Assembly (NCBI RefSeq): GCF_009834535.1
Contig: NC_045711.1
Location: forward strand, 50,840,001-50,904,000
Direction of reading: 5' to 3'
Length of the DNA: 64,000 nt
DNA from: Camelus ferus
Taxonomy: Eukaryota
Shown here piece by piece: positions 28,701-41,400 of the stretch (positions are counted from its first letter, which is position 1; each line of letters opens with the position of its first letter). The notes under the pieces are model-generated. The model was given only the letters and a program-made list of their open reading frames with translations. It was not told where the DNA came from and did no database searches. A program made the position numbers and the translations under genes.

Positions 28701-30249
28701 ACAGGGTGTTGCCCTTTTTGTAAGGGTTATAGTCTGAAGTCACCCAGAATGGTGAAGACTGCATATGTTCACATTACTCTTAAAAGTCCCTGATGTCAGG
28801 TGGGGAGGGTATAGCTCTGGTAGAGTGCGTGCCTAGCATGCAGGAAGTCCTGGGTTCAATCCCCAGTCTCTCTATTAAAAAAAAAAAGAAAGAAAAAGTC
28901 CCTGATGTCACCCATGAGGTGTACTGGGCTTTGAGTGTGTGGTGCCATCTCGGTACCACCTGCACTGCCTGAGATTTTCTTTACAAGTTGGACCAGGTCA
29001 CTCTCTTTGGTGAGCACCAGGGGAATCATTTAATCTGTGTTCAGGGAACCATGTTGTATAAAAAATACTCACTAGTGTTTTACCTGAATATGTCCTGTTG
29101 GATTTGTGTAGTGGTGTGGATCCACGGATGAGGGAGGACCATGTATCCTCTGGGCCAAAAGGGACCCCTGAGGGAGAGGCGCTTGAGCAGGGAAGAAGCT
29201 CTGTAGGGAGTGGAGGCCTGTACCTGTCCCTGCTCATCCCCACTGGCCTTGAGCAAGTCACCCCCTCACACCTTTTTGTTTCCTCTGTGTAAATGAGGAT
29301 CATACCTCCTTATAGGGTAGTGATAGGAAGTGAAAAAAGCTACTTGACAGAATCATGTAGTTCTTGGCCTGTGGGTGCTCAGTCGAGTTTTTTAAAATGT
29401 TGCCTAAAAGTCCCCAAGCCAATTTTTTTTCTAATTATACATACATTTGTTCATTGCAAATAATTTCTGTATATATCAGGAAATGGCGATTGCCTGTAAC
29501 CCCCCGATTCCCAGCAGCAGCCGTTGTTACCAATATGGTGCACCGTTTTCCAGGCTTTCTTTTTATATGCATCTTATATAATAATAATGACATTAACAGT
29601 ATTAATACATTTCAAACCTGTTTCCCCAAATGGGAGACGCTCTATCCATGCTAGATGCTTCCTGGTGAGCACCTCCCTTGATCCCGAGGGGCCCAGATCA
29701 TCGCCATGTTATGAAGGAGAACTTAGGACCCTCGGGACTATGCGCTATGTGAGGCAGAATGAGTCCAGTTTTGAATCTACTCCTCAAGATCCAAGGGAGA
29801 AGGAGTTTGTGTTTTAGTCTCTGCATAGCAACATTTTTAAGAGCTCAGACATTCTTAAAACCGTTTTCTCCTCAGGGCCTGGGGAGTTTTCAGCAGAACT
29901 GGGGTGTAAGTGGATCTGCACAGAGGAGACGAGCATTGATTGGTAGCGTGTGGGTCTCCTCAGACTGACTGGACCTTTTGTCTCCCATGACTTTGTCCCT
30001 CCAGAATCCAAGTCCGGCTCTCGGCCCCGTAAGCCGCCCCCCCGGAAACANNNNNNNNNNNNNNNNNNNNNNNNNNNNNNNNNNNNNNNNNNNNNNNNNN
30101 NNNNNNNNNNNNNNNNNNNNNNNNNNNNNNNNNNNNNNNNNNNNNNNNNNNNNNNNNNNNNNNNNNNNNNNNNNNNNNNNNNNNNNNNNNNNNNNNNNNN
30201 NNNCCATGACATCCTCCGGTGGGTCCTGCAGACCGATTCTCAGCAGTNN
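19280..30249 (+). CDS. LRRC59: LRRC59 (p34, ER/nuclear-envelope LRR membrane protein), ~306 aa; join(19280-19384,21122-21181,22975-23133,23360-23464,26133-26205,28266-28439,30005-30249)
   Basis: Spliced translation [35 protein letters not shown]...[14 protein letters not shown] matches LRRC59; all introns GT-AG; total 921 nt is in frame; TM segment and stop partly under Ns. Confidence 0.97.
21122..21181 (+). CDS. LRRC59: LRRC59 exon 2
   Basis: [20 protein letters not shown]; CTAG / GTAAGA. Confidence 0.95.
22023..22172 (+). mobile_element. Camelid-type tRNA-derived SINE in LRRC59 intron 2
   Basis: GGTATAGCTCAGTGGTAGAGTGCATG...GGTTCAATCCC (A and B boxes), A-rich tail, TSD AAGAACCATTT at 22012-22022 and 22173-22183. 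Confidence 0.88.
22975..23133 (+). CDS. LRRC59: LRRC59 exon 3
   Basis: [19 protein letters not shown]...FAQLK; CTAG / GTAACG. Confidence 0.96.
23360..23464 (+). CDS. LRRC59: LRRC59 exon 4
   Basis: [14 protein letters not shown]...QCANK; TTAG / GTAAGC. Confidence 0.96.
26133..26205 (+). CDS. LRRC59: LRRC59 exon 5
   Basis: [24 protein letters not shown]; GCAG / GTAGGT. Confidence 0.95.
26440..27225 (+). mobile_element. L2 fragment(s)
   Basis: TTTTAAAACATAAGTCAG..GCTTAAAACCCT..TTAGAATGAAATTCAAACTC and GCACTTAGAACAAGGCCTGGCACACAGCAGG motifs; boundaries approximate. Confidence 0.6.
28266..28439 (+). CDS. LRRC59: LRRC59 exon 6 (charged coiled coil)
   Basis: [24 protein letters not shown]...NQAP; GTAG / GTACGT. 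Confidence 0.95.
28799..28893 (+). mobile_element. Camelid-type tRNA-derived SINE in LRRC59 intron 6
   Basis: GGGGAGGGTATAGCTCTGGTAGAG...GGTTCAATCCCCAG plus poly(A); perfect 17-bp TSD AAAAGTCCCTGATGTCA at 28782-28798 and 28894-28910; TT/AAAA L1 endonuclease site. Confidence 0.92.
30005..30249 (+). CDS. LRRC59: LRRC59 exon 7, coding part
   Basis: [14 protein letters not shown]-[153 N, frame kept][14 protein letters not shown], then T followed by N at the expected stop. Confidence 0.9.
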
Positions 30250-31966
30250 NNNNNNNNNNNNNNNNNNNNNNNNNNNNNNNNNNNNNNNNNNNNNNNNNNN
30301 NNNNNNNNNNNNNNNNNNNNNNNNNNNNNNNNNNNNNNNNNNNNNNNNNNNNNNNNNNNNNNNNNNNNNNNNNNNNNNNTAGACCTCCTCTTTGTAAGAC
30401 CTCCTTGTTCCTCAGTCAGGGTTCCCTGGTTGAATAGGGAGAAGTAAGAGGTAGGGACAGTAACCTGCATGCTTAAAAGAATAGGCTTGAGGTGGGGAGA
30501 GGAAAAAACAGCCTTTTCTAGTTGTTATACGAAGCTGTGTAAAGGCAAGACTCATTTCTACTAAAGGTCAGCTGTCACTCCATTTATACTTTTGTATGTC
30601 ACAGACCCTTTTTTTCATTCCTCCCTGGGGAGCCAGGGCAGATCAGGAGGCAGTGTGTTATTGGGGACTAGGGGGAACACTATACTCAGCAAATCTAGCC
30701 TAAATTTGGGGGGAGGGACATACCTATTTTTAAGGACCTCAGACATTTCAGGTATTTTAAATGATCATACAAAATCTCAGGCTGTGAAAGGGACTTCAAG
30801 ACCATCCAGTCCAATATAACACTTGTAGATGGGGAAACTGAGGCCTTCCATGACTTGCCTGCAGTCTCAGTTTGAGGCAGAACTGGATTTCCACCCTGGT
30901 GTCCTTCCTTTCCTTTCCATCATTTTGCCTCCTTTATAATGTCCTGAGAAAACAAAACTTACACTAGAATTGTGTATCTCTTGGCTGGAGTATAGACTCT
31001 TTCCTGGGAAACAGATTTATGACTCACAAACAAATCTCATAGCTACGAGGGTCTTGGGCAGCTCCTGCGAAGTCCTGCCGCAGCTTATGTGGTTTCTATA
31101 AAACGGGGATGGTCCAGGCTCCTGGCGTCAGTTTGAGAGCATGAACTCCCTGACTGCCAGTAAACAAGGTGGACCCTTGCAAAGCCACACTGTCTGTGAC
31201 AGCTCTGTTAAGTAACTGGTGTGATTAAATACCTCAGAGCAACCTGGAAACTCAAGCTTCATAGACAATGAGGTGTAGAACTGTTTTGACTGTAGACATC
31301 ACTACATGTATACAACGAAGGGAAACAAGTAGCATCGTGGAGTTTAAAAGTGACACATTAAGGACTAGCACAAATAAGGGGGGAACTGTCTGTTCTCATC
31401 TGCCAGGTTAAGCATTTTCTTGCTCTGTGGCCTCCTTTGCCTCTTTTCACAACAGCTGGACGGAGGGATCAGAAATGGCCATGTCATGGTGCTCATTCTT
31501 AGAAAACTCCGGATTGCGAGCTCTTTGCCTCTCCCCAGGGAGAGCAAGAACCTGCCATGTTCAGTCAGAACGGGATCCAGCTTTTCAGCACTAGTGGCCC
31601 ATTTGGATAGGACTGACACACAACTGTCCTGACAGTGGAAGAGAGGACTTGTTCTCCCTCAAGGACAGCTCTGCCGCGCAGGCCCACACCTCACTCAGAA
31701 TCACTACACATTCCTTTAGTCTTCCTCCAAGCTCCAGAGCCGTTGGCGTATATGCTTCACTGAAACTAAACACATAGTACATAAAATGAGATTAAGAGCA
31801 TACAGCAGTCAGCACAGTGACCAGACCCCGTTCCCTGGCTGGGGGAGGCAGCTTCAGTGGGTGGGGGAAGGCTGGGGCCCACTCAGTCCTGTCGAGCAGC
31901 TCACCAAGGGCAGTTCACTCATGACCTCGAGATTTGATGCTGAGGTTCTTTTGGATTTCTCCTGTT

Positions 31967-32278: not shown

Positions 32279-32455
32279 TCAGTCTGCAGTGTCTAAAGAG
32301 AGATCTGGCTGCAAAGCTGTCATCTGAAGGTAGATGCGCCTGGAGAGCTCTGGCCCAATACGGCGGGAGGTGGCTGTCACACCTTCTCCACGGCGCACCT
32401 GTATGTCTGCGAGCAAATTCTGGCGTTCTTGCTCAGAAATACACCGCTTATAAGC
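32279..32455 (-). CDS. EME1: EME1 exon 9, coding part
   Basis: [58 protein letters not shown]. Confidence 0.95.
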
Positions 32456-35400
32456 CTGAAAATGGTAAATGACCTGTTAATACCACACCATACACAGCCA
32501 TTCCTCATGAATAAGGGTTGGGGGGTAAGAACCCATCCTCCCTCCCTGGTCAGTGTTGACTCTGATCTCAGTAGACCCACACTGGTGACATACAAGGTAT
32601 TCTTGGGCCCTCACTGGTGTGGTCCTGGAAACTGGCACCCCACTAAGGCCACAGTGCACTAGGCAGTGACGCCTGGAACAGCATACCTGGATCAGGAGCT
32701 GCGGGGAGGGATAGGTGTCCACAACAGCACTGGCCATTTCCAGGCTGACTCGGTTCAGCTGCTGAATCTGTCTCTTCCAGACCAGCGCGAGCCCCCTGCC
32801 ACAGCGGTCCACCTTTGCCCCTTCCAGCCCAGTCACTCTCCAGGCAGAAGGAGAAACTAGTTTGATCTCGGAGCTTTCTGAAAACAGCACAGTTGAGGAG
32901 CTACGAGTCACTTGTTACTCTGCTGCACCTGTCCCCTTAACTAATAATTCCTCCACTGACCTCAGAAGAGGTGGGCACAATGGTCTATCTGGCCTAGTTA
33001 AACGCTCACTGTTCCCAAGCAGTGCCAGTTGATGATTCCTCTTAAAACATCTATTCCTTTTCATTAAAAGAGAAGGTACCAGAGAACTATGAGACCCTTG
33101 CTTATATTGAGATAGGGTTGTATTGATCAGAGAGGCCATGTGCACAGGGTAGGCACAAGGGACTGAGTATCAGGCCATTTGGAGTCTGGTTCTGGTTCTA
33201 ATTTGCTAGGAACTTTGACAAGTTGGTCTCTCCAGGCCTCGGTTCCCTCAGGTATAAAATGAGGGACTTGGACTGGATTGTCTCTGAGGTCTCATTAATT
33301 TTAAATTCTGGCTATGAATAGTCCTTGAGCTAGCTAGGCTAGAATTGTGTTTGACAAGGGCTTATTACATTGTGACCTGATCTACAGTGAGTCCTGGTAA
33401 CTTGGCCCACTGGTGACCCAGTACCACCTTGCAGGACACAAACTTACACATAAGGTAAAGGAGAACATTTTAAGGGGACTAGAGGGCTCTTTCCAAGAAT
33501 GCCCAGGGTTAGGTCAGCTCCTTCTGCTTCTAGCTTGAGTGACCACAGACTAGCAGCAGAGTTCAGAGGAAAGGGATATCTTTGGGTACCAGAACCACTG
33601 TAAAGGACAGGGCCCAGCGACGGAGCCAGGACTTGATGGGGCACTCACTTGAAGGGTGCTTCAGCCACAGCCTTTGTGAACGTGCATGCAAAGTTGGCCA
33701 GCTCTTTCCAGCTCTGCACAATTCGAGCCTGGGCTTCTGTGTGTAGCTGCAGATCCACCAGTGCCTAGAAACCCAAAAGCAGGATGGACTGGAAGGGCAC
33801 AGAGAGACTAGTTTGAAACTGCTCTCCTCTCCCTGTTCAGTGAAGCTGCACCCCAGCCCCTTGGCTCCCTGTTTGGCCCCTTCTTAGTGCCAAGGCATAA
33901 AGTAGTGTCCAGCAGGCATTTTACTCTTTATCAGCAGCAAATTGGGTTAGATGAGAGTGGGCACCCACGCTGACTCAGGCAACAGAAGTTCTTACCTCTT
34001 CTATGTCTACCCTGGTCACCCCGGCCGCTGTGTTGGCCTCTAGTTGTCTTTCCTTCCTCTTCTCCTTGGCCTGTTCTCTGGTGGCCACTCCCTGTTTCCT
34101 TCTCCTCGGAGGATTCGGAGCACTGGAGCAGGGGAGGAAATCAAAGAGTGACACCTCCAGGCTGAGCTCAGGCAGAAGAGGTATGCAAAGCTTAGAGCAG
34201 AGAGTCCCACAGGGCTGGTCAGGGACACTAGTTTGCAGAGGGACCTAGATCTGGGATAAATAAATTCAACCCTGTTGGCCCAAGAGCTGCCCCTTTTAAC
34301 GCCAAGTCTCAAGGACAAATCCAAACCTGAAACAGTTCTCCTGATCCACAACCACCAGTGACACAGCTTTCCCAGCTGTCCTTGCCGTGATGTCAGTTAC
34401 AAAGCTCTGAAGCGTTTCCTTCCCTTCCTCGGTGCTGCCCAGAGTTCTCTGTATAAATGGGCAGAAACTGCATGAATGCCTGCTCCCTAGGGTCATCCCT
34501 CTGTCCCATGCCTCGGCACCAACCCCTCTGGCTCTGCCCACCTGTTTGAAATTGTAGATCATAGGTACAAATGCCTCTGCCAAGAGCAACACCAGGATCA
34601 TTGGCTCCTCCACCCAGTCCTCTCCATCCTGTCAAAGGACATGGAACCCAGCAGAGGGAGGCAGGTCAGCAGGTGCTCAGCACCTGTGAGAGTGACCCAG
34701 GCCTTTTGGGTGAATGAACACATCCCCATCAGCCTAGTCCATTTTGCATTACCCTTTTTCTTCTGAAATGAAGTCACAGTTACAAGAAACAGTGATCCAT
34801 GATCCTGTCCCTCCCAGTCTCAACTGTTCAACCTTGGTGTACTGCATCTCAGAGGCAGTGAATAAGAAAAGAACATTAGTGAATTGAAATGGATTGAGAA
34901 ATAACTGCCAATATTTCTATGCATTTTGAACAGGGAGACAGAGAGAAGGAAACTCTTCCAAAAGATTTGGAACAAATAAGTAACTTGGGCTTTGAGGGTA
35001 GATGCTAAGTATGAGCTGAGCGGCCCATACAAACACACAGGTTTTGTGTGACAAAGAACCACTAGGGAAACTTCAGTCTGTGAGAGCACCTCTTTGCCAT
35101 ACTAGGGCGTAATCAAACAGAGCCAGGGCCGCCTTGTGGTCCACAATCCTACAGCAGTACAGTATTACAGAGTGCAGTTTTCTGATTAGGTCCCTATAAT
35201 AAGAAAAAGCCAAGTCCCACAATATAGCAAAGCACAAGTGGGAAGAGCTCTGGGTTATAGTCCCCGCCCACCGCCGCCACCACTCAGCTGTGATCCTTAA
35301 CAAGGCTTTCCAACTTCTCATTTTCCCCCCTGTGATGTGGGGATGAGAATTCCTTCCTTATAGGATAACTGTGAGAGAAACAGGGGCGATCTTTCCCCAC

Positions 35401-36778
35401 CACAAGGGATGCCTGACAATATCTGGAGTCCACTCGGAGGTGGACTACTGAAATCTAGGGTGTGGAGGCCAGGGACACTGCTAAATGTCCTACAATGCAC
35501 AGGACAGGCTGGCACAACAGGGAACTAACCAATCTGAAATGGCAACAGTCCCTGAGGAGGAGAAAGCGAGTTAACATCATTATTACCTTGAGGTACTGCG
35601 CTGTCCCTTGTAGTTTCCTTGTGTCCCACTCCTGCCTTGGAAAACAGTCCCTTTATTAAATCCTGAGTGTGCCATCTGCTTTCCTGCTGGGGCCCTGACT
35701 GCTATATGTCCCTTAGAATAAAAGCATATTTATTCTGTGACTCTCAGGAGGAGGAGAGACAGCAGCCAGAAAAGCCCTACCTCAGCGGGCCCAGCCCTTC
35801 TCCTCCAGGAGATGCTGCGAGGCACGGCCTGCGCCTCAATCACACAGGAGCACTCCATGGACTGCAGTGCACCGAGGAGCTGGCCCCCACCTTCCATCTG
35901 TAAGAGCACTGCAACAGAGGGGAAAGGGGTTGTCAGTGGGGCCCAGGAAGCAGTTCACACAGCACAGGGTAAAGAAGGCTGCCTGGAGGACCTGGATCCA
36001 GCAGCACAACGATGTGCTTTAAGCATTCCTCTGGCCTCTGAGCTTTCAGCCTGTTGACCAGGGCTGCCTTCTTCTTCCTTTCCTGTTGCCTCAGGGTGCT
36101 TTCCTTCTGGCTTGCTAGTCCCCGCTGCTGGCATCTCTGGGAGTCTCTCTTCTGGACCTTCTGATTATGCTTGGTTCTCTTCTGAGGCGGGGGTACCTCT
36201 TCATTTGTTTGGGCTACTGTCAAGCTGTTGCTCTGGACACAGCAGGTAGTTGGGCAGGCTGGAAGCCGATGGCATGGATGGTCTAACATAGGGTCCTTGC
36301 ACTTGGATGCACGCCTTGCTAAGGTGTCATGGGGGGGAATATAAGTGATCCTTGGAAAGGGCTGGTTTTGCCAGTCACATGATGCTCCTTCATTAGTCTG
36401 ATGAGCCAAAACACTTTTAGCTGGGGAGCTGGAGTCCTCAGGGCTCAGCTGCTTGTGGGTCAAAAATCTACAAGTAAGTCTCTCAGCCAGGGGAATAAAT
36501 TCCTCCTCATCGTCACTTCCACTGCTTAGCACCCTAACTGGCTCTGTTTGTGAGACAGTTTGAGCTGTGTCTGGGACAGGTGGTGGATCTTTCCATTTTG
36601 GTGATGGAGGACAGGAGGCCTCAGAATCTGAGATGTCAACCACTACAATCTCCTCCTCTTTCTGAGGCTCCCTCCTCTTTGCTGAAGATGGTTCCTTCTT
36701 CAGGAAGGCAAATGTTGGCAACTCCTCAGAGTCACTCTCACTGGAATCCAGTGAGAGTGATGACTTCTTTAGAGCCAT
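32279..36778 (-). CDS. EME1: EME1 (MUS81 partner); join(36778-35992,35908-35781,34628-34542,34448-34327,34122-33996,33764-33649,32877-32687,32455-32279); +1 frameshift in exon 8 as written
   Basis: [30 protein letters not shown]...[20 protein letters not shown] matches EME1 throughout; summed exon length 1735 nt = 3n+1. Confidence 0.95.
32687..32877 (-). CDS. EME1: EME1 exon 8 (191 nt, one extra base)
   Basis: [18 protein letters not shown] in one frame, [45 protein letters not shown] in another; TCAG / GTATGC. Confidence 0.92.
33649..33764 (-). CDS. EME1: EME1 exon 7
   Basis: [38 protein letters not shown]; CTAG / GTGAGT. Confidence 0.95.
33996..34122 (-). CDS. EME1: EME1 exon 6 (alternative upstream acceptor at 34161)
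   Basis: [11 protein letters not shown]...VTRVDIEE; CCAG / GTAAGA. Confidence 0.9.
34327..34448 (-). CDS. EME1: EME1 exon 5
   Basis: [40 protein letters not shown]; ACAG / GTTTGG. Confidence 0.94.
34542..34628 (-). CDS. EME1: EME1 exon 4
   Basis: [29 protein letters not shown]; ACAG / GTGGGC. Confidence 0.94.
35375..35570. mobile_element. MER20 (hAT-Charlie) DNA transposon fossil
   Basis: GAGGCCAGGGACACTGCTAAATGTCCTACAATGCACAGGACAG matches the MER20 core. Confidence 0.75.
35781..35908 (-). CDS. EME1: EME1 exon 3
   Basis: [43 protein letters not shown]; GCAG / GTAGGG. Confidence 0.95.
35992..36778 (-). CDS. EME1: EME1 exon 2, coding part (acceptor at 36802)
   Basis: MALKK...[17 protein letters not shown]; donor GTCCTC. 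Confidence 0.93.
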
Positions 36779-37124
36779 CAAAAATGCTATCCGATTAATT
36801 CCCTAAAAGGAAAAGATAAGACACAGACTGTAGCATTGAATTCAGTCCACTAGATGTGTTCTACAGCCAAGCTTTATAGAAATAAATATGATACACAGAG
36901 AAATGGAGAAATAGAGAAATAGGGCATGGTCCCAGCAAGGTCAGCCTGGAACTCAGAACAGCTTTGTCTGTAATCTAACAGGAACCCTCCTCAAATCCTT
37001 TCTAGGTCAAGGTGAAGTATAAACAAAGTGGATGCTACTATTAAAAAGTCTTAATGGAGTAGAAGCGAGATTCCACACCACCCCTTTGTTGATCTCTGCA
37101 TTTAAAATGGAAGTACCGAGTCAT

Positions 37125-37849: not shown

Positions 37850-38450
37850 GGGACCTCACCCCTGTCCCCGTCCGGGCCTCTGCTGACTGGCAGAATACGG
37901 AGATCGGACAAGCCGGCCCCTGCCAGGCATATTCCACGCCTTTCCAGCCGGCATCAGGGCAGGCAGCTCGTCCACACGCCGCAGCAGAGGCCCCGGACGC
38001 CCCGGCCACAAAGCCGCTACGGAGCAGAGCTCAAGAGGGAGGTCCTACCTCGCCCGCCTGCCAGCTTGCCTGCAGGCCGGGCTGTACTCACCAGCAACTT
38101 CTCGCGCCACTCTTTCAACCGCCACGTAGGACCCGGAAGTAGATCTTCCCGTAGCGGAAACGGAAGGTTTCGGAGACCGAAAGCGCGCGTACAGCAAGCA
38201 TGGCGTTGGCGGCGCTGACGCTGAGGACGCGGACAGCTGGTAGCGGGACGCCGTCGCCGTCGCGGGGCGAGGGGTGGAGGCGGGATGGAGACCTTGCCGG
38301 GAGCCGGGGGATGGAGGCCGTTCCCCGCGGGGGACCCTGGGGGCGGGAGGGTTGGGGGATAGTGCGGGGTCCAAGAGGTTTGAGGGGCGGCAGTCGCCGA
38401 TCACATGACATCTGGGGCGAGGGTCAGGTGACCATCCCTGCCTGGCTTGC
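37850..38450. promoter_or_regulatory. Bidirectional CpG-island promoter of EME1 and MRPL27, including EME1 non-coding exon 1
   Basis: CCGGAAGT (ETS/GABP) at 38133-38140 plus further CGGAA motifs; EME1 donor CTG|GTGAGT at 38092/38091 is only ~110 nt from the MRPL27 ATG. Confidence 0.85.
38200..38239 (+). CDS. MRPL27: MRPL27 exon 1
   Basis: [13 protein letters not shown]; donor GTAGCG. Confidence 0.92.
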
Positions 38451-41400
38451 AAGTACAGCTCCCTTAGCGGTTGGTGACTTAAGTTCCCCGCTTCTCCTGT
38501 CTGGCTTTGTTTGGGTTCCTTCATCTGTAAACATGAGTTATTACCTCAGGCTCATTGGAGCCCAAAAAACGAATCCGTCCGTTCAACAGACTGAGGTCTG
38601 TCTTTGTGCCAGACACAGTGGTAGGTGTTGAGGATTTCAGCAGAGAAAATAAAGACGTAGTCTCTCCCCCAAGGCTGGTCCTTTCTAATGGATAAGTCAG
38701 TTAAGAAGCACATAAATAAAATAGTTGTAAATTGTAACAAGTACTGTGAAAGAAAGGAAAAAATGTGTCTGTTTCTCTTTTTTAAGGTGAGTGGTCAGGG
38801 GAGCCCTCTGAGGAGGTAACATGTAAGTTAAGACCTAAAGGATGACAGGAGGCCTGGCTTTGTAAGAGAGGCAAGAGAGTGACTTGACCCAGTTTTACAT
38901 CTTGAGAAGTAAACTTGTTTTTATGTGAATTTAAAGGGAATAGCAGTGGAAATGAGGAAACCAGATGGGAAGCTTTAATAGTAGCCCTGATGAGAGATGA
39001 TTTAGCCGAGATGTTAGTACTGTCAGTGAACTTGGAGGGAACTGGGTGGATTTGAGATCCATTTGGAGTTAGAATCCACAGGACTTGCTGGTGAACTAGA
39101 TATGTGAGGTGAGCAAAGGGAAGGAATCAGCAGTGATTCCTTGATTTCTGCTTGAGCAACTGCATTTCCTTTGAGCATTGTTTAAGGAGGAGGATGGTAA
39201 ATAGGGTGAAGGGCAAAGGTTTGTGAATGAGATAAGGTAGATAAAGCAAGTCTAGTTCCTGACCTTAGTAAGAAAGTGAATGAATGAATAAATAGGTGTT
39301 TAAAGGTAGGGAGATCCTGGTGCTGTGCTCTAAGTCCTTATCTTTGATCCTTTGCCCCAGCTAGTCTGTGTTCTCATTAAAACTTCAGAAACCTAGGTTT
39401 TAGGAAATCTGAATTTACGGGCTCCAGGGACCCACAAAGGCTCTAAAGATCCTGGCATCACCCTGACTAAGCATAGCTGTATCTGCAGACCTGAGGGCAG
39501 GGACTGCCATTCCTCGGCTTTACGTGGGGCACAAGGCTTCCATCCTGGTTAGTATGAATTTTAGTTCCCTTTCCTTTTTAAAATAAATGCCGTTGACCAC
39601 TTTGGAATGAAAATGGAGACATCAGATTAACAAGGGCAGGGTGTCAGCCTTCTTGGTTGGACTTGTACTTGGTGGGCTTGCCGAATGAAGAAAGGGCCCA
39701 GCCTTCTGAAATGGACAGGAGCCTGTGGTAGCCTCCCTCAGAAAGGCTGCCCTTTTTGTTTACAAGTGTATGGTGTGCCATGGATGGATGGTTGGATGGA
39801 TGGCTGAGAAAGTGGTGGGTGAGGTCAAAGCAGGCGCCTCTCCCTGGGTGTCCTGTGCTGAGCTCTGTGGTCTGGCCCCTACACAGTGCATGGAGCCTTG
39901 AGGGCATGATGGTGAGTGAGGCTGAAACAGGCAGCTCTGTGGTGTCCTCTTGCTTGCGGGCTTCTGTTTCTGTGGTGTTTGTTTCTCCTCATTAGGACTG
40001 GATGTGTCAGGACCTAGGGCACATGGTGTTTATTTTTTTCCATTAATATGTTATTCCGTCCCCCCCTCTCCTAACCCCCTACCCACCCAAAGCCACACAC
40101 ACACACATGCACATTTCATGCAGTGCTTACACCCTGGACAATACAAGGAATGACTTGTCCCCTGTCATGGGAGAAGGCCAAGGACTTCAGACACTCCCTG
40201 AAAGCCCACACAGTCAAGTGGCATTTCTGCTCACGTATCTTCCTCACCTCCCCTGCCACTACCCACTGCCACCTCTCAGCTTAGCAGATGGCCCATTGAG
40301 ACAGAAAGAGAGTCTGATTGGGAGCCTCCCTGTTTGAACAACATTTCTGTTCTCTCTGCAGTTACAGCCCTGCTGAACCCCCCTCAGGCTGCAGCTCTTG
40401 CTGTCAGATATGCATCCAAGAAGACAGGTGGCAGCTCCAAGAACCTGGGTGGAAAGTCACCAGGCAAACGCTTTGGCGTCAAGAAAATGGAGGGTGAGGG
40501 TGTGGCTTGGTTTCCACTTCCCAGTTAGCACCTACCCTGCTACCCCTGGCGTTCCTATGAAGAGCAGGAAAAACACGCAAGGGCCCAGCCCTGTACTCTC
40601 CATTTTGCTTACCAGAACATTTGGCTCCTGATTAAAGAGGCAGATTAGAACTGAGGTGGGGTGGGGGGCCTGAGGAAGAGCAGATAAGTGGGAAGCTTGG
40701 CCATGCAACAGGAGAGGGGGCTGCCAGGTGGGGGACAGGGAGCTGCTTATGTCAGACTTTTGGGAGTTGGTCTTATCCAGGGGCAGGCCTAGAGGGTGGT
40801 GTACAGCATTTGGGCTAGGAAAGCGAGGGCTGCCATGTTTTCTTACCAGTTTGCTGTGCCTGCCTCATCCTGGGGGCCCAGAGTTAGTTAGTGCACTTGT
40901 GGACTTTTCTTCTAGGTCACTACGTTCATGCTGGCAACATCCTTGCAACACAGCGCCACTTCCGCTGGCACCCAGGTGCTCATGTGAGTTGCTCTGTACC
41001 CTCCTGCCTCACTTTTTCTTCTCTAAAATGAGCTCTCCATGCTCCTAAGCATAGTAATTTTTACAGTTGCATTTAAATTGAGTGCTTATTAAATGCCAAG
41101 TGTCATGTTGATTCCTGGGCCTACATTATCTCCATTCATCCATACCTCCATCCCTAGGGTAGGTAGATATCACCTCTTGTTTACAGGTAAGATGCCAGAA
41201 ACTTAGAAAGGTGGGGAATGGGGCGCGGGGTGGGGGGGCAAGTGACAGAGCTGGGATTTGAACCAGGTCTGCCTGACTACCAAATCACTTTTTTGCCTTG
41301 GTAATAACATTAGCCTGGTTCTCTTGGGTGTCTTTTCTAACCTCCAGTTCTTAGAAGAGGAGATTTCTAGTGATTTAAGATATTTTTTTTAACCTTTTCA

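What the first reader, a model, noticed from the sequence alone, without database searches (positions are those of the whole stretch)
32687..32877. Apparent +1 frameshift in EME1 exon 8 that would remove the C-terminal HhH2 region
Seen: the exon is 191 nt and the CDS sums to 3n+1. The minus strand reads GCT GGA A GGG GCA AAG GTG, with one extra A (T at 32822/32823 on +). The conserved [18 protein letters not shown] and [18 protein letters not shown] lie in different frames. Read literally, the frame continues RGKGGPLW...AAPDP and stops at TAA 32450-32448 in the last exon, so the mRNA would likely escape NMD. Established: the EME1 C-terminal tandem helix-hairpin-helix region contributes to MUS81 dimerisation and DNA binding. 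Inference: this is either an indel error next to a G4 run (most likely a priori), a segregating loss-of-function allele, or a lineage-specific change. The other exons show no decay.
Basis: partly seen in the sequence, partly recalled or inferred. Interest (0 to 1): 0.75.

Follow-up and report, generated by a model that had tools for sequence, protein, structure and literature searches.

The report
False frameshift in wild camel EME1
The one-base frameshift that seems to cut off the DNA-binding tail of the repair protein EME1 in this wild Bactrian camel assembly is almost certainly a long-read consensus error at a variable site, because seven other camelid sequences, including an Illumina assembly of the same species, have the normal 190-base exon.

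Summary
EME1 lies on the minus strand. The exon at 32877-32687 is 191 nt, the CDS is 1735 nt (3n+1), and a literal reading stops at TAA 32450-32448.

The window is Camelus ferus GCA_009834535.1, chromosome CM020783.1, positions 50,840,001-50,904,000, a PacBio Sequel assembly. Seven other camelid sources have a 190-nt exon:
- C. bactrianus HiFi, two C. dromedarius assemblies, alpaca and two spliced RNA-seq contigs read GGAGGGGCA.
- The 2012 Illumina C. ferus assembly (CB1) reads GGAAGGGCA, a G>A change giving Gly475Arg.

The window reads GGAAGGGGCA. That is exactly the gap-shifted union of these two alleles, or equally the CB1 allele with one extra G in a G run. This is the pattern expected from a consensus or polishing error at a polymorphic site beside a homopolymer.

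Over 7.4 kb the two C. ferus assemblies differ only by this base and one SNP. The other seven coding exons are intact, and the sequence after the shift still encodes a complete EME1-MUS81_C domain. RefSeq labels the C. ferus protein LOW QUALITY.

Verdict: assembly artefact (about 0.88). No reads could be inspected, so a real heterozygous allele is not excluded (about 0.09). The probably real by-product is Gly475Arg at an otherwise invariant linker glycine.

An earlier follow-up in this scan reached the same verdict for another frameshift in this genome (OR51E2).

The parts
32818..32823 (-). The frame break. The minus strand reads GGAAGGGG here, where all other camelid copies have 7 bases (GGAGGGG or GGAAGGG). 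This is record position CM020783.1:50,872,818-50,872,823.
32687..32877 (-). EME1 coding exon 7 (exon 8 counting the 5' non-coding exon). It is 191 nt here and 190 nt in seven other camelid sources. It encodes the end of the inter-domain linker and the first half of the EME1-MUS81_C domain.
32279..32455 (-). Last coding exon, encoding the second half of the EME1-MUS81_C domain and the true stop. The literal frameshifted reading stops at TAA 32450-32448.
33649..33764 (-). EME1 coding exon 6, 100% identical to the camel protein P0196.
33996..34122 (-). EME1 coding exon 5.
34327..34448 (-). EME1 coding exon 4.
34542..34628 (-). EME1 coding exon 3.
35781..35908 (-). EME1 coding exon 2.
35992..36778 (-). 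EME1 first coding exon, with the start ATG at 36778.

Best explanation
The extra base is not in the animal's gene. It is a consensus or polishing artefact of the PacBio Sequel (continuous long read) assembly GCA_009834535.1.

C. ferus carries, at least as one allele, a G>A substitution (c.1423G>A, Gly475Arg). This turns the ancestral GGAGGGG into GGAAGGG. The window's GGAAGGGG can arise in three ways:
- Reads of the two alleles are piled up with the gap placed differently (GGA-GGGG against GGAAGGG-), and each column is called separately.
- A polisher applies only the insertion half of an insertion+deletion pair.
- The G run of the A allele is simply over-called by one.

The real EME1 of this animal is then a normal 577-residue protein with both its ERCC4-like domain and its C-terminal (HhH)2 domain, possibly with Arg instead of Gly at position 475.

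Shown: the sequence states in eight sources, the intactness of everything else, and the sequencing platforms. Inferred: the exact route by which the consensus went wrong, and the heterozygosity of the sequenced animal.
For: 1. **Identity of the window.** It is an exact substring of C. ferus GCA_009834535.1, CM020783.1.
2. **Exon length.** It is 191 nt only here. It is 190 nt in C. bactrianus HiFi GCA_048773025.1, C. ferus CB1 GCA_000311805.2, C. dromedarius GCA_036321535.1 and GCA_000803125.3, alpaca GCA_048564905.1, and two spliced Logan RNA-seq contigs from SRR33129664 and SRR33129665.
3. **The same-species witness.** CB1 reads GGAAGGGCA and its protein EPY86711.1 has DWAGRAKVD. Its contigs came from Illumina GAIIx 500-bp paired reads assembled with SOAPdenovo (PMC3514880). 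The locus holds no N in 7.9 kb.
4. **Platforms.** The window's assembly is PacBio Sequel at 130x (PMC9374477). The intact C. bactrianus copy is HiFi/hifiasm (PMC12905343).
5. **Union of alleles.** The window 8-mer is the union of the two 7-mers. MAFFT against CB1 places the gap in the G run.
6. **Near-identity of the two C. ferus assemblies.** Over 38004-30579 (7.4 kb) they differ only by this base and one SNP at 30917.
7. **No decay.** All other exons match camel EME1 at 100%. The two pieces after the shift each match their half of PF21292, profile positions 1-32 and 33-74.
8. **RefSeq label.** XP_032354032.1 is named LOW QUALITY PROTEIN [Camelus ferus] and is identical to the C. bactrianus protein. 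This site is the only place where the window cannot encode it.
9. **Lead only, not evidence.** The scan's notebook holds 92 notes mentioning frameshifts in 559 windows of this genome. One follow-up (OR51E2) also concluded assembly error.
Against: - No raw reads of the sequenced animal could be inspected.
- With 130x coverage, most consensus errors should have been removed.
- Only one indel discrepancy was seen in 7.4 kb, so the local error rate is not high.
- Whether the two C. ferus assemblies come from different animals, and which reads were used for polishing, could not be established. The assembly paper is not held.
- The species of the two RNA-seq runs is unverified. They carry the Bactrian/wild-type bases but the ancestral G allele.
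- Heterozygous EME1 loss would probably be tolerated, so a real allele is not biologically absurd.
Confidence: 0.88

Rival explanations
1. A real one-base insertion allele, heterozygous or homozygous, in the individual wild camel used for the PacBio assembly. It would encode a 521-residue EME1 that keeps the nuclease-like domain but lacks the (HhH)2 domain. The mRNA would escape nonsense-mediated decay because the stop lies in the last exon.
For: - The sequence is what the deposited assembly says.
- Coverage was high, at 130x.
- Wild camels are a small, inbred population where deleterious alleles can drift.
- The stop is 5 nt into the last exon.
- G-run slippage on the A allele is a plausible mutation.
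Against: - It is absent from the other C. ferus assembly and from all six other camelid sources.
- It needs two separate mutations at adjacent bases within C. ferus: the G>A change and then +G.
- There is no other lesion in the gene.
- The 8-mer is exactly the form a consensus error at this site would take.
- RefSeq treated it as an error.
Confidence: 0.09
2. A lineage-specific, fixed change in C. ferus: loss or remodelling of the EME1 C-terminus in wild camels.
For: Only the window itself.
Against: - The Illumina assembly of the wild camel 'Naran' has an in-frame 190-nt exon.
- Sequence downstream of the shift is identical to C. bactrianus and still encodes a full PF21292 domain.
Confidence: 0.01
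3. The extra base is real but is compensated at the RNA level. The second AG of the acceptor (cagAAAG|C, exon start moved from 32877 to 32873) removes 4 nt. The frame then returns at the extra base, and the protein keeps its (HhH)2 domain, with about 18 residues replaced ([18 protein letters not shown] in place of [19 protein letters not shown]).
For: That frame is open across the whole exon (and the ORF 32477-32911). An AG sits at 32875-32874.
Against: - The replaced segment is among the most conserved parts of EME1.
- The same AG exists in all camelids without any sign of use.
- The spliced RNA contigs use the normal acceptor.
- It presupposes that the insertion is real.
Confidence: 0.01

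Closest known systems
Uncorrected single-base indels in PacBio continuous-long-read assemblies, which RefSeq marks as 'LOW QUALITY PROTEIN' and corrects in its gene models
   Same: - One extra base beside or in a short homopolymer.
- Present only in the long-read assembly and absent from Illumina and HiFi assemblies.
- The gene is otherwise perfect.
- RefSeq corrected the model.
   Different: The error sits exactly on a polymorphic base, and the wrong sequence equals the union of the two alleles. This points to a heterozygous-site or polishing mix-up rather than a plain homopolymer miscount. That distinction could not be tested without reads.
EME1, the non-catalytic partner of MUS81 (human structures 2ZIU, 2ZIX, 4P0P and 9F98)
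   Same: - The camel protein aligns end to end with 4p0p_B at E = 8e-175.
- It has ERCC4 (274-446) and EME1-MUS81_C (488-561) domains.
- It lies head to head with MRPL27.
   Different: Nothing beyond ordinary species differences, apart from the Gly475Arg variant in the CB1 copy.
Real truncating alleles or unitary pseudogenes of DNA-repair genes in mammals
   Same: A premature stop would remove a functional domain.
   Different: - It is not shared by another individual of the species or by sister species.
- There are no secondary lesions.
- No substitutions have accumulated downstream.

Membership tests
EME1 orthologue | ERCC4-like (nuclease-like) domain followed by the EME1/MUS81 C-terminal (HhH)2 domain | tested here: met
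   Pfam on the camel protein P0196 finds PF02732 at residues 274-446 and PF21292 at 488-561. The window's post-shift pieces match PF21292 profile positions 1-32 and 33-74.
EME1 orthologue | Full-length similarity to EME1 of other mammals and to solved EME1 chains | tested here: met
   Exons are 100% identical to C. bactrianus/C. ferus EME1 and about 95% identical to alpaca EME1. The match to 4p0p_B has E = 8e-175.
EME1 orthologue | Conserved neighbourhood (MRPL27 divergently upstream) | tested here: met
   A Ribosomal_L27 gene is called on the opposite strand upstream. An MRPL27-like ORF lies at 40334-40528.
Assembly indel artefact | Absent from independent assemblies of the same species and of close relatives | tested here: met
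   CB1 (C. ferus, Illumina), C. bactrianus HiFi, two dromedary assemblies and alpaca all have 190 nt.
Assembly indel artefact | Error-prone platform and homopolymer context | tested here: met
   The platform is PacBio Sequel. The base is in or next to AA/GGGG.
Assembly indel artefact | Raw reads of the same animal disagree with the consensus | not testable with these tools
   No read archive is available. Logan look-ups for genomic ORFs over the site found nothing.
Assembly indel artefact | Transcripts show the intact frame | tested here: inconclusive
   Two spliced RNA contigs are intact. Their animals are unknown and are not the assembly animal.
Real loss-of-function allele or pseudogene | Lesion shared by other individuals or species, or accompanied by further lesions or relaxed constraint | tested here: not met
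   The lesion is unique to one assembly. All other exons are intact. Downstream sequence is identical to C. bactrianus.

The most novel reading that the evidence does not exclude
The sequenced wild camel really carries a frameshift allele of EME1. It would make a stable mRNA (stop in the last exon) for a protein with the nuclease-like domain but no (HhH)2 domain. That would be a natural truncation, and possibly a dominant-negative partner of MUS81, segregating in a critically endangered species.

A weaker but more likely version (about 0.6): only the Gly475Arg substitution is real. It lies at a linker glycine that is invariant in every other homologue matched by the motif search, more than 140 sequences.
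Probability: 0.09. Interest if true: 0.45.

Novelty: not a real feature. Interest (0 to 1): 0.1.

Why it matters
Taken at face value, the frameshift would mean a mammal lacking the DNA-binding and dimerising tail of EME1, which would be notable for MUS81 biology. It is instead a caution. This assembly carries single-base indels in coding exons, and at least here the error coincides with a real polymorphism. Gene-loss screens that use GCA_009834535.1 alone would therefore call false losses. RefSeq's repaired protein also hides the probably real Gly475Arg variant, because it restores Gly rather than Arg. For conservation genetics, Gly475Arg at an invariant glycine is a small candidate for the genetic load of wild camels.

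Tried and rejected
1. **Logan contigs from camel whole-genome runs.** I looked for independent reads by searching with the exon-8 ORF. All 37 hits were 50-88% identical over at most 77% of the query, so none was a camel genomic copy. An exact look-up of the antisense ORF that spans the site was not on record. That look-up may have failed only because of its GTG start.
2. **The assembly paper** (doi 10.1111/1755-0998.13141) and Gwon et al. 2014 (PMC4193937) are not held. The polishing procedure, the identity of the animal and the role of the linker glycine therefore rest on secondary sources or stay open.
3. **SRR33129664 and SRR33129665** could not be tied to a species through the literature.
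4. **Fixed lineage-specific loss** was rejected because CB1 is in frame.
5. **Rescue by the AG 4 nt into the exon** is formally possible but would replace a highly conserved segment, and there is no evidence that this AG is used.
6. **Structure prediction** was not run. Pfam borders and the PDB sequence alignment already place the break in the inter-domain linker.
7. **Flanks were kept short.** Fetched loci never reached the N runs at 30051-30379. Those runs were not read in other copies.

Full report
**What is in the window**

On the minus strand, the exon bounded by AG at 32879-32878 and GT at 32686-32685 is 191 nt long. Translation shows [18 protein letters not shown] in one frame and [45 protein letters not shown] in the next frame. 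tblastn with EME1 from whale, horse, buffalo, pig, alpaca and camels breaks at 32823/32821 every time.

I derived an exact spliced model on the C. bactrianus copy and transferred it to the window. It has eight coding exons, all with AG/GT borders:

| Coding exon | Window coordinates (minus strand) |
|---|---|
| 1 | 36778-35992 |
| 2 | 35908-35781 |
| 3 | 34628-34542 |
| 4 | 34448-34327 |
| 5 | 34122-33996 |
| 6 | 33764-33649 |
| 7 | 32877-32687 |
| 8 | 32455-32279 |

The CDS is 1735 nt, which is 3n+1. Read literally, the protein has 474 native residues, then 47 foreign ones, and stops at TAA 32450-32448, 5 nt into the last exon.

**Where the window comes from**

The gene is EME1. Exon 2 finds EME1 of many mammals. 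The alpaca protein is about 95% identical. The protein shared by C. bactrianus and C. ferus (P0196) matches every exon at 100%, except that it cannot be read across the break.

Fetching the DNA that encodes P0196 gave two loci. L001 comes from C. ferus GCA_009834535.1 (CM020783.1) and is an exact substring of the window. L002 comes from C. bactrianus GCA_048773025.1 and is one base shorter. The window is CM020783.1:50,840,001-50,904,000.

**The site in eight sources**

| Source | Sequence at the site | Exon length |
|---|---|---|
| Window (= L001), C. ferus, PacBio | GGAAGGGGCA | 191 nt |
| C. ferus CB1 GCA_000311805.2, Illumina | GGAAGGGCA | 190 nt |
| C. bactrianus GCA_048773025.1, HiFi | GGAGGGGCA | 190 nt |
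| C. dromedarius GCA_036321535.1 | GGAGGGGCA | 190 nt |
| C. dromedarius GCA_000803125.3 | GGAGGGGCA | 190 nt |
| Vicugna pacos GCA_048564905.1 | GGAGGGGCA | 190 nt |
| Logan RNA-seq contig, SRR33129664 (spliced) | GGAGGGGCA | 190 nt |
| Logan RNA-seq contig, SRR33129665 (spliced) | GGAGGGGCA | 190 nt |

The CB1 allele is in frame and encodes DWAGRAKVD, as in GenBank protein EPY86711.1. So the ancestral camelid state is GGAGGGG. C. ferus has an A allele, GGAAGGG. The window has eight bases where everything else has seven.

**Why this looks like an artefact**

- **Form of the error.** The window's 8-mer is what results when the two 7-mers are aligned as GGA-GGGG and GGAAGGG- and every column is kept. 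Seen from CB1, it is the A allele with one G too many in the G run, which is where MAFFT puts the gap.
- **Platforms.** The window's assembly was made from PacBio Sequel reads at 130x (PMC9374477, table 2). CB1 contigs were built with SOAPdenovo from Illumina GAIIx 500-bp paired reads. SOLiD and 454 were used only for mate pairs (PMC3514880). The CB1 locus has no N in 7.9 kb. The intact C. bactrianus copy is a HiFi/hifiasm assembly (PMC12905343).
- **Near-identity of the two C. ferus assemblies.** Over window 38004-30579 (7.4 kb) they differ only by this base and one SNP at 30917.
- **No decay.** Downstream of the break the window is identical to C. bactrianus. The two post-shift pieces still match profile positions 1-32 and 33-74 of PF21292.
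- **RefSeq treated it as an error.** RefSeq names the C. ferus protein 'LOW QUALITY PROTEIN' and gives it the C. bactrianus sequence. This break is the only place where the genome cannot encode that protein, so the label must refer to this site.

The scan's own notebook lists 92 notes mentioning frameshifts in 559 windows of this genome. They include single-base cases in CD19, SLC4A2, IL2RB, OTOG and others, and one follow-up (OR51E2) also concluded assembly error. I use this only as a lead. I did not test those cases.

**What a real frameshift would mean**

Pfam places the ERCC4-like domain at residues 274-446 and the EME1-MUS81_C domain at 488-561. The break at residue 474/475 is therefore in the inter-domain linker, and the whole (HhH)2 domain would be lost. 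The camel C-terminal 338 residues align end to end with human EME1 in 4P0P chain B.

According to a review of the Chang 2008 and Gwon 2014 structures, both (HhH)2 domains help to bind branched DNA, and the linkers shape the quaternary structure (PMC7516265). A real truncation would be a substantial lesion.

I give a real allele in the assembly animal about 0.09, for these reasons:
- It needs two adjacent mutations within C. ferus.
- It is absent from every other source.
- It has exactly the form of a consensus error.

A fixed species-level loss is contradicted by CB1.

**A by-product that is probably real**

Both C. ferus assemblies carry the A. They may be independent, but that is unconfirmed, because the second could have been polished with the first animal's reads.

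The change is c.1423G>A, Gly475Arg. RefSeq's repair restores Gly, so the database protein for C. ferus may differ from the animal's protein at this residue. Whether Arg475 is fixed, segregating or confined to one animal is unknown.

**What is not settled**

- No reads of the assembly animal were available. Logan searches gave no camel genomic contigs over the site.
- The assembly paper is not held.
- The RNA-seq runs could not be assigned to a species.
- The exact error route is inferred, not shown. The candidates are a heterozygous pile-up, polishing with another animal's reads, or a plain G-run over-call.

**Verdict**

As a biological feature the frameshift is most likely not real, so interest is low.

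Noticed in passing
window 32821 (minus-strand codon 475); L003:4255-4262: The 2012 C. ferus assembly has GGAAGGG (Gly475Arg, DWAGRAKVD). This glycine is G in every other EME1 homologue matched by the motif search (more than 140 sequences). RefSeq's corrected C. ferus protein restores Gly, so it may misreport this residue.
   Followed up: partly
L007:1-475 versus window 38005-38478 and 35067-35541: Upstream of window position 38004, the CB1 scaffold does not continue into the 67%-GC EME1/MRPL27 promoter. It carries instead a 475-nt stretch 100% identical to EME1 intron sequence at 35541-35067. This looks like a gap-closing or misjoin error in CB1.
   Followed up: partly
window 32873-32877: A second AG lies 4 nt into the exon (cagAAAG|C). 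The frame it would open is free of stops across the exon and rejoins the normal frame at the extra base. This is a formal rescue route with no evidence of use.
   Followed up: partly
P0004 (Pteropus medius isoform X2) against window 33648 and 32460: A predicted bat isoform skips this exon entirely, joining exon 7 directly to exon 9. Skipping a 190-nt exon shifts the frame, so such models end early. Whether this isoform is real was not examined.
   Followed up: no
window 38133-38201 and 36779-36808: The 608-residue dromedary model KAB1266651.1 adds 31 N-terminal residues from an upstream exon. In the window that reading meets a stop just before the normal ATG, so the extension is probably an annotation artefact.
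   Followed up: no
window 33783 and 30917: These are the only other differences seen. At 33783 (intron) the base is C in both C. ferus assemblies and T in C. bactrianus. At 30917 it is G in the window and A in CB1. The low count shows how little the two-humped camels differ here.
   Followed up: yes
whole genome (scan notebook): The notebook holds 92 notes mentioning frameshifts in 559 windows of this assembly, many described as +1 single-base cases in otherwise intact essential genes. A systematic check against the HiFi C. bactrianus assembly would probably clear most of them at once.
   Followed up: no
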